A stretch of DNA of 64,000 nt from Trichosphaerium sp. ATCC 40318 (Eukaryota; Protista; Tubulinea), in NCBI GenBank assembly GCA_038496445.1, contig JALMLS010000593.1:124001-188000 (forward strand). Reading direction: 5' to 3'. This document shows positions 17,790 through 31,356 of this stretch, one piece after another. The position numbers and the translations under genes are program-made. A model generated the notes under the pieces. It had not been told where the DNA came from, searched no databases, and saw only the letters and a program-made list of their open reading frames with translations. How positions within the stretch are numbered: position 1 is the first letter of the stretch; each line of letters opens with the position of its first letter.

Positions 17790-17884
17790 TTCTCTGGAGC
17801 AAATAAATATCGACCACATTGACTTCTGTCAATGGCAAAGTATGCGATATTTTTTTTTTTTACAAACAGTTATTTATGTGCAGA

Positions 17885-20880
17885 TTACACAGTTTTAAAA
17901 TGTGGTACAACACGCTGTTTTACAACGTAAATTACGCCAATAGCGACTACAACTTCTATGATACCAAGAACCAAAAAGCCGATATTGATATTAGGGTTAT
18001 TTTGTTTAAAGAATGTAAGACTCAAAGACCATCTAAGAAAAAAGTCAGACAAAAAAAAGCAAAAAAAGCAAACAAGTAGAGTTAGAAAATGCTGAAAATC
18101 GTACGTTGCTTCTGTCCATATTTCTTTAGAATCATCTACAATGGTGTAATACCCTGTTGCTTTCTCATAAAGTCCAGTACTGAAGATATTGGTTAGATAC
18201 AATTGTAATAACAATATCAAAGCATCAACGAACCTCATAGCTTTATGCCATCTAACTAGTGATCCAATACAATGTCCTGATTCACTGCATTCCATAAGAG
18301 CCTATTTCGAGAATAAGAAAAAAACTGTTGGACCCAAAAAAAACGAAGGAAAAAAGTATTGCAAATACGAACAGGGCATGAGTGTTTCTTGTCACAAGAC
18401 ATATCCTTGTGGTTAATAGCTCCAAGACGGAACAACCATTCATACAAGAAAAAGTTCCATGTATTTCTTCTATTCTCACTGTAGACACTAGAATAATGCG
18501 TAGGCACAGAGGAGAAACCTAAAAGAAAGAGTTTACAAAAGAAACAAAAAAAAAAAGAAAGGAAATTAAAGAGCAACAACATTTTGTTGTCTAAAAAACA
18601 CTGGTTTCTGTATGTACCTTCTTTAAATATTCCTCTCATTGTAGAACAACTTCCATTAACCAACATACATTCGAGTAATTCAGAAACAATTGTACAGTTT
18701 GCTTTAACATTACTATTAGGTGGCATACCAACTTGATCCCATATAAGTTTAGTAAGCATAGTAGACGCCTCACAAACCAATTGAGAGTCAACTGTTCTAT
18801 CAAAAATACCATGATAGTGACTTAAATAGAAGTAAATAAGTTACCTTCGAAAAAGGAAAAAAGGAAAGTCACTTTCTGAAGTGAATATTGGATTGTTATT
18901 ATCTCCGTACGCATTATTGTATTCAGTATTATGATCAGTAATTACTATAGTCTTAGCAGCCATTTTTTTATCTTGTTTAATAAACGACATTGATGACGAA
19001 GGTGGAAGACCTTTAGTGCTTGTACTCAATTTTAATTCAAGATTTTCAGTATCAGCACCAGCCTAAAGATATCCAAACACTTTAGTACAAGTAATACATA
19101 CCTTACCGACAAAGGAAAGAATAGAATAAAGCAAATCAAATCAAGAACAAACTCAAAAAAAGACAGAAAAACGTACTTGAAGTGCAGCTTCTACAAGAAG
19201 ACTTGTTTTACTGGCATCCTCGTGTTGGTGTATAAACAAAGAACTACCTTATGGGATATAAGATTCAAATAGTCTCATTGTGTGCTCTCAATACAAAAAC
19301 AAAGTTTAAACATACCTCCATTTTTAGTTAATCCAACTTGTTTCAACTCAATGATAGATTCGATTTTAGAGAAATCAATGTTTTTGAAATCAAGGTTTGA
19401 ATAACCTGCAGGAGACTCACAACCACCTGATTTTGCTGTTTTTTCACAAGAGAATGATGATATATCTCTAGCAAATCTGCTTGATCCAACATAGCCGAAA
19501 GTTTCGCCATCAAACCAAGCAAAGATAACATTCTTTGAATACTTCTGTAGGTCGCTTGCACGTGTCAATCTCTGTTTTCAGTTGTTAGTTAGAAAGTTCA
19601 GAAAGTATAATAAGCGTACAAGATATTGGTAGGCACCCATTAAAGCAACAGTCCCAGAAATATCGGAATCAGCACCCAAAGCGTAATCTTGGAAGAAACT
19701 AATTATCTTGTTAAAAAAAATACCTTGATGTTACGCTCTCTCTGTGGCTACAAAAAATACCTTATTGTGTCCATAGATGCGATAACAAGTATGGTATCTT
19801 TATCTTCCTTAATCTCTTCAACTGATGACCATACAGACTGTCCACCAACAGGTTGACATTGACCTGAATAAAACAAGTAAGCAAAAAAAAATTCCACAAA
19901 CATTTTGATTCTTTGTTCTTTTCAAAGTTTTCTCTTCGTACTTCTCCTCAAACATGTTTTTGAGTCATGTGTTGCTTGCATAAATACATTAAGAGTAGCA
20001 GACCACCTAGGCCAGGTATTGTAGTTCCCTTTCTGATTATCTTTGGCTTTCTAACTAATTTTAACAAAAACAAGCAAAAACGACGTTTGGATTGTTACTA
20101 CTTCGTACGTTAATGACTCCTACTGACTCTTCGTTCGTTAAACCCCATATTGGAAACGGGTATTCGTAAAAGAGACTTGATTTGCCCTTATCATTCCAAG
20201 CGTATGTTGTATTCAAACCACTGCGTTCGTTTGGTATTCTAGAATCAGGAGAGAAGCCGCCTAAGACGCCGTTTAGAAAAGAAAAAAAATTTAAGGGGTT
20301 GTGGAAATCGTATATTTACGCTGTGGGGGTAGTCCATGAGTGACGTTTGTCACTATTACACCTTTTATAACGCCTTTTAGATCGTTGATAAACTTTGATG
20401 GATCACTAAGCAAGCTTTTGGGAAGCAGGTTAGTTTTCTTGCGCGTATAGGGTCTTAGGTACGTACTCTGCGAAAATAGTGACGCTCATTACTACAACAT
20501 GATGCTTTAACTTTTTCTTTTCGTCTTTAGATTGCACAAGTTGATTGTACATCTCTTTAGACTCTGCAACGTTTCAGAATTGTCAAGTATACTTTTTACT
20601 TACCGATCCAATACAAATAACCTGTAGAGCCATCCATACCCGCTAATTACATGTAAGGATGTATTATTTATGTAAATTGGCGTACTTGTGCAGCCGATTG
20701 GTTGAGAGTTGTTGAGTAACCTAACGCAAGGAAACCCTGCTACTTCAGTGTATATAGGTAATCCTTGTTCATCTGACGCCCCTTTTTGAAAAAAACAATT
20801 AGACTTGCAATTGAAAGCCGTTACGCACCAGATAACGAAAATAGGCACAATAGTGTCACTACGAGAGCACCAGTCAGCAT
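17885..20880 (-). CDS. NCSTN: Nicastrin (gamma-secretase subunit), multi-exon
   Basis: Signal peptide, PCVRLLNNSQPIGC, GADSDISG, FDGETFGYVGSSRF, GLPPSSSMSF, WTE motif and a single C-terminal TM helix. Confidence 0.9.
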
Positions 20881-21125
20881 GATTGCTGTTCGTTTAACAC
20901 TATGCTTAATCGCAATGACTGGCTTAACGTAATTGATCCGTTGCACCCGTAGTGCATAGCACTACAATTTATACGCCCTTTGTGTGCGATAAAAAAGTCT
21001 CTTGCCGTTTTCTAACGCGGGAAGGTTTATTAACACTTTTTGTTGCACTACCTGGCTACTTCGCAACTATGAGCGCCAGAAAAAAGAGGAAATTGATCGT
21101 AAGTCGCAAATGAAGCTGACATTTT

Positions 21126-21185
21126 TGTCATTTGCGAAAACCACTTTTTTTTTCTTTCAAAATGTTTACGTTTAAAAGAAAGTAC
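21126..21185 (+). promoter_or_regulatory. U6-like upstream Pol III promoter
   Basis: TGTCATTTGCGAAAACCAC-T9-CTTTCAAAATGTTTACGTTTAAAAGAAAGTAC aligns with the U6 upstream sequence TGCCATTTCTTTAAAACCACAA-T7-CTCAATCAAAAGTTCTGTGTTTAAAAATGGTAC. Confidence 0.6.
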
Positions 21186-21199
21186 TTTACCACCCAAAT

Positions 21200-21471
21200 G
21201 CTTCGAATCTCCTCGCCCGAGCTCTCTGCGATACGAACATGCTTCCCCGCGTCGTGCTACCTGTTCACAATCACTATTGCGACAATGCGACCGCGAGCGG
21301 TCCACTAGCGCACACCAGGAGCACGGATGGTGCCCGAGCTGCCACGTTCAAGAGGCAGCCGGTCGGCCTTCACCGGCCTAGTCCATCCGCTTGGATAACC
21401 TTGTGAGCTGCAACATGGTGTGTAACGCGGTTGCCATGGAAAGTTCGTCTCTCCAGGGATACCTTTTTTTT
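21200..21471 (+). ncRNA. Unidentified structured ~265-nt RNA, probable Pol III transcript
   Basis: About 59% GC (153/260 by count) in an AT-rich background, U6-like promoter at U6-like spacing, T8 terminator at 21464-21471, and many nested complementary helices. Confidence 0.7.
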
Positions 21472-22159
21472 CAACACTCACTGCAGCTGCTTAGAGGGAT
21501 GTTGATGGTAAAAAATCGATAATAAATAAGAGTACAGAGGCGATATGTGAGATGTACAAAGAACTATGTAGGTGTAGAAGCTAAACGTCGTAAATGAATG
21601 GTTTCTGAATGCTATAATGCATACTAACATACCTAAAAATAAAACGCCGTTTCGTTTGTAAACAGTTTTAATCCGATTTTTTTTTGAGCTCGTTAACGAA
21701 CACCACTGAATCAGTGGTGTACAAGGGCTAATGTAAATAAAAGGTGCCAAATAGATATGCCACAGCCCGAAAACAGTATTTTATTCTATGGCGTGGTGCA
21801 CCTGTTTGCAACACTTGTTATTGTGTTGTTTCAAATCAGTGTGTTTGCAGACCATCACTCCTTTTACCATTGTACGTTCTCAAAATAGTTAAAAAAGGCA
21901 TGGTTTTCATTAAACGGAATTGACCCAGGATAGATATTGATAAAAAAGAGGTTGATCCCATTTTCGTCATTACTCAAAACCTAAACATTCCACTTTTATT
22001 TGATTAATAACCAATTTGATCGAGTCAAGTGACAAGTTGCATGATTTCGTTTACATAGTTTACCATTTCTGGCTTTAAAAAGTGTATTGTTAATTTTTTC
22101 ATGGTGAAATCCGGTTTGCTGAAGTTAATTGCCGAAAGATCCATGTCTGCTTTGGTGGT

Positions 22160-22490
22160 GGTGTGTCTTCTCTTGATGAGTTCTTTGTTCGCTTTTCTTT
22201 AAAGGATTCAGCGATGTATTTACGTATGTTCCCAACCGGCTTGAGTTGAGACACGCCATTTTACGTAAGTAGAATCTGTGAATAGGTGCATAGGTTGGTC
22301 GATTGGGACGACTTTGACAGCTACTATAGCTGCTTCAAGTTCCGCTGCATCGATGTCTCGCTTAGTGACAGCTCTGCAGGCTAGGTTGAGATTTCTTTCA
22401 CCAAAGTATACTCCAACACAAGCCACATTACCATTTTTCTTTTTGAATTCGTGAACCGTCTGTCCAAACACAGACAGTTTCTTTATGCCA
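22160..22490 (-). pseudogene. Degenerate RNase HI domain, probably a retroelement relic
   Basis: VWTDGS, frameshift in an A-run (22434-22438), then GVYFG...AAELEAAIVA...LFTDSTYV..W..GW, a stop, then ANKELI. The final H..GNE.AD motif is absent. Confidence 0.7.
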
Positions 22491-22601
22491 ATACCAGTCA
22501 ACATCAACGCTACTATCAATGGAGTAGTTACAAGGAAAAGAAAATGGTTGAAAATGGTTAAAAATAGGTTCACTAAAACTGAAAACTCCAAAAAAGCAAC
22601 A

Positions 22602-23959
22602 ATGGACACGTTACCTCCAGAAATCTTTCAAATGATAATGATAGAGCTTCCGCCTGCTACTATCCGCTTATGTAGGCTGGTGTGCCACGAATGGACGTAT
22701 TCATCAAGCAGTGAATCCGTTTGGGAGAAAATAGTACATGAAGAGTTTGGTTCGACTCGCTCGTCATTCTCAGACGTTGATACATCATCAGAAGCGTTCT
22801 GGTTTGATTTTTGCAAGCGTTTAGGTAAATACACAAAAAACTGCGCTGTTTAACTGACAAGTAATCAAGAACACTCTCAAAGTGGCCCACTCATACCAGA
22901 ATGTATTACAACAACCGGTACGCATGTTAACTTTACATAGAGCGACTTTTTGTGTTTTCTCTCCTAAATATAAACAAAGTGTCGATAGTCTATATTCTTA
23001 TGTTTTAAAGGTAGCAGATGGGATTACAACGGGAGTCGGCCAGAAAATGACAAAGAGTATCAGTATGGTCCTCGAAACATGGTAAATAAATCCCCATACG
23101 CCTGCGTTTGTGAAACTGACTATTTTAAAGACATTTAAAACAGGATCTGCTTATTGCACAGCCGCTGGATTAAACAAAAATGTAGATGTAGTGTACACAA
23201 TGAGCGACCTTGTTTTCTTAAAGGGTATCGTTGTAGGACGCCCTTCTGGAATGTACGCCTCCAAACTCAAAAACTTTCTTTTTTCAAAATGTGTCTACTG
23301 CCCTGTTAAGGGTGTGCTAGTGTCTCGGATTTCGTTTGCAGATATCTGCTAGTTCGCTTATGATGCTGATGTAATTTTTAGGTACACAGCACACCTTGAT
23401 TCAGCGCTAATATGGGTTCTTAACGGTATGTCGTCTTTTTTTTTTTTTTTCTTCTTCAAATGTTAAATTTCTTTTATCTAGAAATGCCTAATTTTGACGA
23501 TTACGAAGCATTCAATTCTATGACCGAACCTGAGTATATGGATTACGTCGAAAAAGGAGGAGCTAACCTCCCACATTTAACATTCTTCGAAATAAACGAA
23601 CAAATGGAAGTACGTTTTGCTTCAGAGTAGCTCTTTTTTTTGTTTTGCTATTGAGCCAATAATATCGAGTTTCTAAGCTTTTTAGGACCGTCGTGTCTCA
23701 TTAGATTGTATGGTTAAAGCAGGTAAACATATTTACATAAAACTATTGAGTGCAAATGGCGATCAGGTACGAGAATAAAGCAAAAACCTTTTTTTGTTAA
23801 TTTTATTTACTTACAAAAACTACTTAGCAAAATATTGATATTGGATATCTTATATGCCACGGTGTTCATACTGGAGTTCAAGGAAATACGGCAGCTGAAA
23901 ATCGTTCTGATTATGGTATGAAAATCAGAACTGTCTATCATCAATCAGACAAGGCATAG
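22602..23959 (+). CDS. F-box protein, multi-exon, with an unrecognised C-terminal domain
   Basis: MDTLPPEIFQMIMIELPPATIRLCRLVCHEW...W is an F-box; downstream GT-AG exons run to TAG at 23957-23959. Confidence 0.75.
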
Positions 23960-30678: not shown

Positions 30679-31248
30679 TTGTTTTTTTGTGGCTAGAAGT
30701 ACGTCCATACTTAATATCAAACCGAAGTATGTAATTAAGGCGAGCACGTTTAAGCTGACATTTCAGGTCATTGACCCTTGACTATTCTGTTAACTATTAT
30801 ATTTTGAAGCAGAATATAAATATCCTGGTGGTTTCTGCACTGTTCGAAACTTTGTCTCGATTTCGAAGAAATCACGTGTTTGCAGAGAAAAAATTTACTC
30901 AAAAGGGCCCTGCCAGTTTACAATACGCGAGCAATACAGCCATTCTAAAAATAAAACTTACTGGCATTTCTGTAAATAGACAAGAGATTTTTTGCAAAGC
31001 AATGACATCTGCAATAATAAACCAAAGACAAAATAAAAAACCAGTACCAGACATAAATTGACATTTTGTAAGGGTGGATATCAGTGTTACCTTTCCAGAA
31101 AAACATGAGTTGTAGATTTGTTAGAACCTGAACTCGGTTACTCATAACCTAAATAATTTCAATGCTTTATTTTGATAAAATGGATGCTATCATACACCTA
31201 GTTCACAGTACTCAATTTGAGAATTATAATATTCAAAATTTAAAGTGC

Positions 31249-31298
31249 AAAAAAATGATTAGCTTCTCGTTATTGCGTGTCATCCTTGCGCAGGGGCC

Positions 31299-31330
<32 letters not shown>

Positions 31331-31356
31331 ACATATGCCTTCCCCGAAGGGTCGGC
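31249..31356 (-). ncRNA. U6: U6 spliceosomal snRNA (copy 2)
   Basis: Identical to copy 1 except for one extra G in the 5' stem-loop; about 100 bp of upstream sequence is also conserved. Confidence 0.98.

What the first reader, a model, noticed from the sequence alone, without database searches (positions are those of the whole stretch)
21126..21471. Unannotated ~265-nt structured RNA gene behind a U6-type promoter
Seen: an intergenic island of about 59% GC, head-to-head with nicastrin, ending in TTTTTTTT (21464-21471). Its upstream region copies the U6 promoter of this same window: CATTT..AAAACCAC, a T-tract, TCAAAA, GTTTAAAA, GTAC. The box-to-TATA gap is 25 nt versus 27 nt in U6, and U6 spacing predicts a start near G21200. 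It folds as a long rod with nested pairings: TCTCTG 21223-28/CAGGGA 21454-59, ACGAAC 21233-38/GTTCGT 21443-48, CCGCGT 21247-52/ACGCGG 21425-30, GTTCACAA 21263-70/TTGTGAGC 21401-08, CGGATGG 21324-30/CCATCCG 21383-89. The rod is capped by two hairpins (GCTGCC 21338-43/GGCAGC 21354-59; GGTCGG 21361-66/CCGGCC 21373-78), with a side hairpin at 21289-21302. Several G-U pairs favour a + strand RNA. Known: type 3 Pol III promoters drive U6, 7SK, RNase P/MRP RNA and plant/ciliate telomerase RNA. I see no Sm site, no C/D boxes, no intact SRP helix 8, no correctly ordered RNase P/MRP CR-I/CR-V, and no TTAGGG-type template. Inference: a novel or very divergent Pol III RNA (telomerase RNA with a non-canonical template, 7SK-like or SRP-like).
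Basis: partly seen in the sequence, partly recalled or inferred. Interest (0 to 1): 0.9.

Follow-up and report, generated by a model that had tools for sequence, protein, structure and literature searches.

The report
Orphan U6-promoter small RNA gene
An amoeba genome carries what looks like a gene for a roughly 265-letter non-coding RNA behind the same outside promoter as its U6 genes; it matches no catalogued RNA family, and I could not test whether it is expressed or conserved.

Summary
At 21200-21463 (+) lies the only G+C island in the 64-kb window: 59% G+C, against 30% just upstream and 37% overall. It sits behind a promoter that copies the two U6 genes of this window block by block: CATTT/AAAACCAC at about -63, a T tract, TCAAAA, GTTTAAAA at -30 and GTAC. 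The box-plus-TATA pattern occurs three times in the window (0.06 expected), at the two U6 genes and here. The body has no TTT at all and runs into T8.

The "long rod" is only partly supported. The whole RNA folds little better than shuffles (z -1.5). The apical Y-shaped domain (z -3.6) and the 5'/3' closing duplex (p about 0.01-0.05) stand out; the middle is ambiguous.

Rfam gives no match even at E = 10. There is no TTAGGG-type template, no 7SK GAUC motif, no Sm site, no C/D boxes and no H/ACA layout.

Verdict: probably a real RNA polymerase III gene for an orphan structured RNA, one of several such candidates that the scan noted in this genome. No sequencing run was listed and no close relative is available, so expression and covariation remain untested. 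The telomerase, 7SK-like and SRP-like readings are not supported.

The parts
21129..21144 (+). Distal promoter box CATTTGCG-AAAACCAC (DUSE/PSE-like), AAAACCAC at -63..-56 of the predicted start
   Evidence: Same box upstream of both U6 genes at -66..-59. With the TATA it occurs only at the 2 U6 genes and here; 0.06 expected by chance.
21145..21162 (+). T9 tract and TCAAAA block between the box and the TATA
   Evidence: Shared with the U6 promoters at matching offsets (-43..-38 here, -44..-39 in U6), read and aligned.
21170..21185 (+). GTTTAAAA (TATA-like, about -30) followed by GTAC
   Evidence: Identical GTTTAAAA in both U6 genes, with the first T at -30 of the Rfam-defined U6 5' end.
21200..21463 (+). 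Predicted RNA body, 264 nt, 59% G+C, no TTT run
   Evidence: Only G+C island of the window; sharp composition edges; no T run of 3 or more; no Rfam match; no Pfam match for its ORFs; single copy in the window.
21223..21252 (+). 5' strand of the closing stems (TCTCTG, ACGAAC, CCGCGT)
   Evidence: Pair probabilities 0.97, 0.97, 0.80. Duplex with the 3' strand is -28.2 kcal/mol, reached by 14-45 of 1000 shuffles.
21425..21459 (+). 3' strand of the closing stems (ACGCGG, GTTCGT, CAGGGA)
   Evidence: As above. The 5' half alone folds no better than shuffles (z +1.1), so its partner is the 3' half.
21289..21302 (+). Side hairpin GACCG-CGAG-CGGUC
   Evidence: Pair probability about 0.87 over its five formable pairs; not significant on its own.
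21320..21392 (+). Apical Y-shaped domain: stem CGGATGG/CCATCCG carrying hairpin A (GCTGCC/GGCAGC) and hairpin B (GGTCGG/CCGGCC)
   Evidence: Folds at -34.2 kcal/mol against -23.9 +/- 2.9 for shuffles, z -3.6, 0 of 300 as good. Hairpin A has pair probability 1.00.
21464..21471 (+). T8, predicted Pol III terminator
   Evidence: First T run of 3 or more after the predicted start. The U6 genes end in T7.

Best explanation
An independent, single-copy gene for a non-coding RNA of about 265-270 nt, transcribed by RNA polymerase III from an external (type 3, U6-like) promoter.

Inferred mechanism:
1. The factor that reads the AAAACCAC box at about -60, and TBP at GTTTAAAA at -30, place Pol III so that it starts at G21200.
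2. The T-free, G+C-rich body is transcribed, and the enzyme stops in the T8 run. This leaves an oligo-U 3' end of the kind that La-type proteins bind.
3. The 5' part (21223-21252) pairs with the 3' part (21425-21459) and closes the molecule.
4. A stable three-way junction with two hairpins (21320-21392) forms the far end and is the likeliest protein-binding platform.

The RNA is best read as the stable scaffold of a small ribonucleoprotein of a family not yet catalogued. It is one of a set of U6-promoter-driven orphan RNAs in this amoebozoan.

Shown here: the promoter copy, the composition island, the T-free body, the terminator, the local structure statistics, and the absence of known-family signatures.

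Inferred, not shown: transcription itself, the exact ends, the protein partners and the function.
For: - The promoter blocks match the two Rfam-confirmed U6 genes in order and spacing, within 1-4 nt.
- The match is confined to discrete blocks with unrelated spacers. That fits functional constraint rather than a recent duplication of a U6 promoter.
- Box plus TATA occurs 3 times against 0.06 expected.
- This is the only G+C island in 64 kb. Its edges coincide with the predicted start and with the T8.
- There is no TTT in 264 nt of body, while the window has about 11 runs of T4 or longer per kb.
- Apical domain z -3.6; closing duplex p about 0.014-0.045.
- The 5' half is not self-structured.
- No ORF in the island has a Pfam match, and there is no tRNA.
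- In dictyostelid amoebae, an upstream element about 60 nt before the start (DUSE) marks small non-coding RNA genes read by Pol II or Pol III, and T runs follow the Pol III-type ones (PMC7919456, read).
- Earlier notes of this scan, unchecked by me, report similar orphan RNAs with this promoter elsewhere in the genome, some with RNA support.
Against: - There is no expression evidence. No sequencing run was listed for the stretch.
- Two exact 22-mers of the RNA are absent from the JGI contig collection. The tools fetched a transcript contig of this species from JGI data. I had no positive control showing that this sample is among the contigs scanned, or that it keeps short non-polyadenylated RNAs.
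- There is no conservation or covariation evidence, because no close relative is available.
- The whole-molecule folding z-score is only -1.5.
- 'No TTT' has a probability of about 0.11 given the composition.
Confidence: 0.7

Rival explanations
1. A highly divergent member of a known Pol III or small-RNA family (telomerase RNA, 7SK, SRP RNA, RNase P/MRP RNA, vault or Y RNA) that Rfam models built on other lineages cannot see.
For: - Type 3 promoters drive these families in other eukaryotes (established knowledge; plant and ciliate telomerase RNA, PMC12133305).
- The overall shape recalls SRP RNA helices 5, 6 and 8: closed ends, and an apical three-way junction with two hairpins.
- A GNAANNUC match (GAAAGTTC, 21439) resembles P/MRP CR-I.
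- Protist homologues of such RNAs often escape covariance models.
Against: - No Rfam match for any of these families, even at E up to 10 on 281-501 nt with lax filters.
- No TTAGGG-type template: best 7-mer has 1 mismatch, best 8-mers have 2.
- No GAUC, and no 3' terminal hairpin as in 7SK.
- The CR-I-like motif sits at the 3' end, in the wrong order for P/MRP.
- Hairpin B is 6 bp with a CCUUCA loop. I saw no GNAR tetraloop and none of the helix-8 loop motifs, judged from my recollection of SRP RNA.
- At about 265 nt it is well above vault and Y RNA sizes.
- Unchecked earlier notes place the SRP, RNase P and MRP RNA genes elsewhere in this genome.
Confidence: 0.12
2. Not a working gene: a silent relic, or a G+C-rich fragment that happens to lie behind promoter-like motifs.
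For: - No RNA evidence.
- Whole-molecule fold is not significant.
- No homologue found anywhere.
Against: - Box plus TATA is expected 0.06 times per window, yet it lies exactly one U6 spacing ahead of the only G+C island, which ends exactly at a T8.
- The T-free body and a strongly stable apical domain are not expected of drifting sequence in a genome of 37% G+C.
Confidence: 0.12
3. Part of a protein-coding transcription unit: an upstream exon or 5' leader of nicastrin on the - strand, a small coding exon, or a G+C-rich element of the shared divergent promoter.
For: - The nicastrin ATG lies only about 320 nt away at 20880 (-).
- An 85-codon ORF on the - strand overlaps the island.
- The transcript contig of nicastrin is cut off at its 5' end at 20537, so its leader is unseen.
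Against: - The ORFs have no Pfam match, and neither exact ORF product is on record.
- Neither 22-mer of the island is in the scanned JGI contigs.
- This reading explains neither the U6-type promoter on the + strand nor the T8.
- No other exon in the window reaches this G+C content.
Confidence: 0.05

Closest known systems
U6 snRNA genes of the same window (type 3 / external Pol III promoter)
   Same: Same promoter blocks in the same order and spacing, a purine start about 30 nt after the TATA, and a T-run terminator.
   Different: The RNA itself is unrelated to U6. It is 265 nt against 107 nt and 59% G+C against 45%, has no U6 sequence, and has no significant complementarity to U6.
Dictyostelid small-RNA genes with the DUSE upstream element (Class I RNAs, snRNAs)
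   Same: A conserved C-rich box about 60 nt upstream of the start, a G start and a T-run end; both are amoebozoan (PMC7919456).
   Different: Class I RNAs are 42-65 nt and carry a conserved 11-nt motif. This RNA is four times longer, carries an added TATA at -30, and shows no family resemblance.
SRP (7SL) RNA
   Same: Size of about 270-300 nt. The 5' and 3' parts pair into a long helix capped by two adjacent hairpins. It is made by Pol III and ends in oligo-U.
   Different: No hit to any SRP model. I saw no helix-8 motif, no GNAR tetraloops and no Alu-domain loops. An SRP RNA gene is noted elsewhere in the genome (unchecked).
Plant and ciliate telomerase RNA (Pol III, type 3 promoter)
   Same: Promoter type, size range and U-tail (PMC12133305).
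   Different: No template for TTAGGG-type repeats within the RNA, and no large single-stranded template loop in the predicted fold.
7SK RNA
   Same: Type 3 promoter, a few hundred nucleotides long, oligo-U 3' end.
   Different: No GAUC-GAUC 5' hairpin motif. The 3' end is paired with the 5' part rather than forming its own terminal hairpin. To my knowledge 7SK is known only in animals.

Membership tests
Pol III gene with external U6-type (type 3) promoter | Upstream proximal/distal box at about -55 to -65, shared with the organism's own U6 genes | tested here: met
   AAAACCAC at -63..-56 here and at -66..-59 in both U6 genes.
Pol III gene with external U6-type (type 3) promoter | TATA-like element at about -30 with U6-like spacing to the box | tested here: met
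   GTTTAAAA at 21170-21177. The box-to-TATA gap is 25 nt here and 27 nt in U6.
Pol III gene with external U6-type (type 3) promoter | Run of T as terminator and no internal T run | tested here: met
   T8 at 21464-21471; no run of 3 or more T in the 264-nt body.
Pol III gene with external U6-type (type 3) promoter | A discrete transcript made by Pol III | not testable with these tools
Telomerase RNA | Template of about 1.5 telomere repeats | tested here: not met
   Against CCCTAA permutations, the best 7-mer has 1 mismatch and the best 8-mers have 2. The TTAGGG telomere is taken from unchecked earlier notes.
7SK RNA | 5' hairpin with paired GAUC motifs, and a separate 3' hairpin before the U tail | tested here: not met
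   No GATC anywhere in the RNA. The 3' end pairs with the 5' part. No Rfam hit.
SRP RNA | Helix 8 with conserved internal loops and a GNAR tetraloop; match to an SRP covariance model | tested here: not met
   No SRP family at E up to 10. The second apical hairpin is 6 bp with loop CCUUCA.
RNase P / MRP RNA | CR-I then CR-V in 5'-to-3' order, forming the P4 pseudoknot | tested here: not met
   The only GNAANNUC match is at 21439, next to the 3' end. No Rfam hit.
H/ACA RNA | Two independent hairpins separated by an ANANNA hinge, with ACA three nt from the 3' end | tested here: not met
   ACACCA (21312) and AUACC-U8 exist, but the halves folded apart give -22 and -53.2 kcal/mol against -93.7 for the whole. 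The 5' half has z +1.1.
Box C/D RNA and Sm-class snRNA | RUGAUGA and CUGA boxes; Sm site AU4-6G | tested here: not met
   None of these motifs is present.

The most novel reading that the evidence does not exclude
The RNA is a founding member of an uncatalogued class of mid-sized (about 200-350 nt), G+C-rich Pol III RNAs. In this amoebozoan lineage they share the U6 promoter and form their own ribonucleoproteins. Possible roles are a functional analogue of 7SK, vault or Y RNA outside animals, or a telomerase RNA with an unexpected template.
Probability: 0.3. Interest if true: 0.7.

Novelty: new variant of a known kind. Interest (0 to 1): 0.5.

Why it matters
If it is transcribed, this RNA adds an unclassified, sizeable Pol III product to a poorly studied branch of amoebae. 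Taken with the similar orphan loci the scan has noted in this genome, it suggests a lineage-specific repertoire of small ribonucleoproteins. That repertoire can be found from sequence alone: a U6-type promoter, a G+C island in an A+T-rich genome, and a T-run. The same recipe could be used to hunt for RNAs that may still be unidentified in this species, such as the telomerase RNA. On its own, with no transcript, no homologue and no partner, this is a well-founded gene prediction rather than a discovery of function.

Tried and rejected
- **Rfam.** Searched at gathering score over the whole window and at E up to 10 on 501 and 281 nt. Only noise came back: rli38 and Ms_IGR-8.
- **tRNA or tRNA-derived origin.** ARAGORN finds nothing. 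The box-B/T-loop-like GCTTCGAATC at +1 has no matching T-stem or acceptor partner.
- **H/ACA layout.** Rejected on energy.
- **Complementarity to U6.** Not better than shuffles.
- **Coding exon.** No Pfam match.
- **Relatives through the neighbouring Ras gene.** Best hit is only 57% identical.
- **Exact look-ups of three window ORFs.** None is on record.
- **Relatives through nicastrin.** The only near-identical hit is a transcript contig of this same species. The next hits are about 51% identical. Their contigs L002-L004 show no G+C island, no promoter copy and no similarity to the RNA.
- **Metagenome scans.** Two exact-22-mer scans found nothing.
- **Earlier findings by sequence.** Blank.
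- **Paralogues in the window.** None.
- **Not attempted.** A search with full-length nicastrin for distant annotated genomes. Synteny at 40-50% protein identity is too unlikely to justify the cost.

Full report
**What is in the sequence**

The window averages 37.3% G+C. The stretch 21200-21463 is 59.1% G+C. The 100 nt before it are 30% and the 100 nt after the T8 are 38%. It is the only place in the 64 kb where 150 nt reach 55% G+C. T8 lies at 21464-21471. The body has no run of three T, although the + strand has about 11 runs of T4 or longer per kb. Given the body's composition, that absence alone has a probability of about 0.11.

**The promoter**

Rfam finds two U6 genes at 6105-6211 (-) and 31249-31356 (-), scoring 106 and 105 bits. 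Their upstream regions are nearly identical to each other.

The candidate's upstream region shares these blocks with them, in the same order:

| Block | Candidate coordinates | Offset in candidate | Offset in U6 |
|---|---|---|---|
| CATTT | 21129-21133 | -71 | -75 |
| AAAACCAC | 21137-21144 | -63..-56 | -66..-59 |
| T tract | 21145-21153 | | |
| TCAAAA | 21157-21162 | -43..-38 | -44..-39 |
| GTTTAAAA | 21170-21177 | G at -30 | G at -31 |
| GTAC | 21182-21185 | -18 | -20 |

The spacers between the blocks differ. So this is not a recent copy of a U6 promoter but the same set of elements.

AAACCAC-N22-32-TTTAAAA occurs three times in the window, on either strand, against 0.06 expected. None of 100 shuffles reached three. 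The three sites are the two U6 genes and this locus, and a looser pattern gives the same three. U6 spacing places the start at G21200 or C21201.

The - strand has no such promoter and no T run at the far side, so the + strand is the transcribed one. A box about 60 nt upstream of small-RNA genes, serving both Pol II and Pol III genes, is known in dictyostelid amoebae as DUSE. There too, T runs follow the Pol III-type genes (PMC7919456).

**Structure**

The whole RNA folds at -93.7 kcal/mol, z -1.53, and 11 of 200 shuffles fold as well. The other strand gives z -1.01. Energy alone therefore supports neither the rod nor a strand.

Within the fold, two parts stand out:
- The apical domain 21320-21392 is a 7-bp stem carrying two hairpins. 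It gives -34.2 kcal/mol against -23.9 +/- 2.9 for shuffles, z -3.6, with 0 of 300 as good.
- The duplex between 21220-21259 and the last 50 nt gives -28.2 kcal/mol, reached by 14-45 of 1000 shuffles.

Pair probabilities are 0.97, 0.97 and 0.80 for the three outer helices and 1.00 for hairpin A. They fall to 0.57 for the stem under the junction, 0.23 for hairpin B and 0.09 for GTTCACAA/TTGTGAGC. The middle has competing pairings, for example CACACCA 21311-21317 with TGGTGTG 21416-21422.

The 5' half alone folds worse than its shuffles (z +1.1). A two-hairpin model costs about 19 kcal/mol more than the closed form. The picture that holds is closed ends, an ambiguous middle and a well-defined Y-shaped tip.

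**What it is not**

- No Rfam family matches at gathering score, nor at E up to 10 on 501 or 281 nt.
- There is no tRNA.
- There is no GATC, no Sm site, no C or D box and no box A. The only GNAANNUC lies next to the 3' end, in the wrong order for RNase P/MRP.
- Against permutations of CCCTAA, the best 7-mer has one mismatch and the best 8-mers have two. That this genome's telomere is TTAGGG-type rests on unchecked earlier notes.
- ORFs in the island have no Pfam family.
- The sequence is single-copy in the window and unrelated to the other structured RNA at 1152-1414.

**Surroundings and organism**

- Nicastrin lies head to head with the candidate. Its exons match Pfam Nicastrin. The ATG is at 20880 (-), followed by a signal peptide and then an intron.
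- A JGI transcript contig (L001, sample 3300016894) matches 14 exons of the window at 98.7-100% identity. A transcriptome of this species is therefore public.
- The next-best nicastrins are about 51% identical. One of those clusters includes the protosteloid amoeba Soliformovum irregulare. The organism is therefore an amoebozoan with no close sequenced relative within reach of these tools.
- Downstream of the candidate lie an RNase H-domain ORF (-) and an F-box ORF (+).

**Expression and conservation: not testable here**

- The look-up of sequencing runs listed no run for 21100-21600, and its cap is one call, so read laying could not be used.
- Two exact 22-mers of the RNA are absent from the JGI contig collection. 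I had no control showing that the species' sample is in the scanned set, or that it keeps short non-polyadenylated RNAs. This is at most weak evidence against a polyadenylated transcript.
- The neighbouring Ras gene has no relative above 57% identity.
- Distant nicastrin contigs carry nothing like the RNA.

**Context from the scan (unchecked AI notes)**

The same genome is reported to hold SRP, RNase P and MRP RNA genes elsewhere. It is also reported to hold about ten other orphan RNAs of 110-570 nt with the same promoter layout, two of them with RNA support. The scan has therefore found this kind of locus before, on other DNA of this genome. That fits the reading given here but is not independent evidence for this locus.

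**Verdict**

This is a well-founded prediction of a Pol III, U6-promoter-driven gene for an orphan structured RNA of about 265 nt (confidence 0.7). The mechanism of transcription is inferred from the promoter and terminator. A role as a ribonucleoprotein scaffold is inferred from the closed ends, the oligo-U tail and the stable apical junction. The telomerase, 7SK and SRP readings each fail a defining feature.

Interest is moderate. The locus is probably real and unclassified, but nothing yet shows what it does.

Noticed in passing
window 1152-1414 (+): A second orphan structured RNA candidate, already noted by the scan. It folds at -94.2 kcal/mol against -73.2 for shuffles (z -4.25, 0 of 200 as good). 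ATACCAC plus a T run lies about 65 nt upstream, with no TTTAAAA at -30. It ends ...ACAGTTTTT, which looks like an ACA box followed by a T run. No Rfam match at E up to 10. It is unrelated in sequence to the 21200 RNA.
   Followed up: partly
window 6105-6211 (-) and 31249-31356 (-): Two U6 genes, 25 kb apart on the same strand. They are nearly identical over the gene and at least 100 nt of promoter, which suggests recent duplication or gene conversion.
   Followed up: partly
window 30983-31008 (+): An isolated copy of the far-upstream U6 promoter segment (AGAGATTTTTTGCAAAGCAATGACAT) lies on the opposite strand, about 350 nt from the second U6 gene. It has no box, no TATA and no gene behind it, so it is probably a remnant.
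   Followed up: no
window 21200-21209 and 21215-21223 / 21332-21340: The RNA begins with GCTTCGAATC, which resembles a tRNA T-loop or box B. It also holds a 9-nt direct repeat, GCCCGAGCT, whose chance probability is about 0.14. Neither led anywhere.
   Followed up: partly
window 17879-20537 (-) and L001: A public JGI transcript contig (sample 3300016894) of nicastrin matches 14 window exons with about 6 mismatches and one gap in 1.7 kb. It comes from the same species, possibly another strain or allele. It fixes the intron-exon structure of the gene but lacks the first two coding exons.
   Followed up: partly
window 22247-22444 (-) and 22485-22853 (+): An RNase H-domain ORF and an F-box ORF lie head to head about 1 kb downstream of the RNA. 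The RNase H gene runs towards the RNA's 3' end.
   Followed up: no
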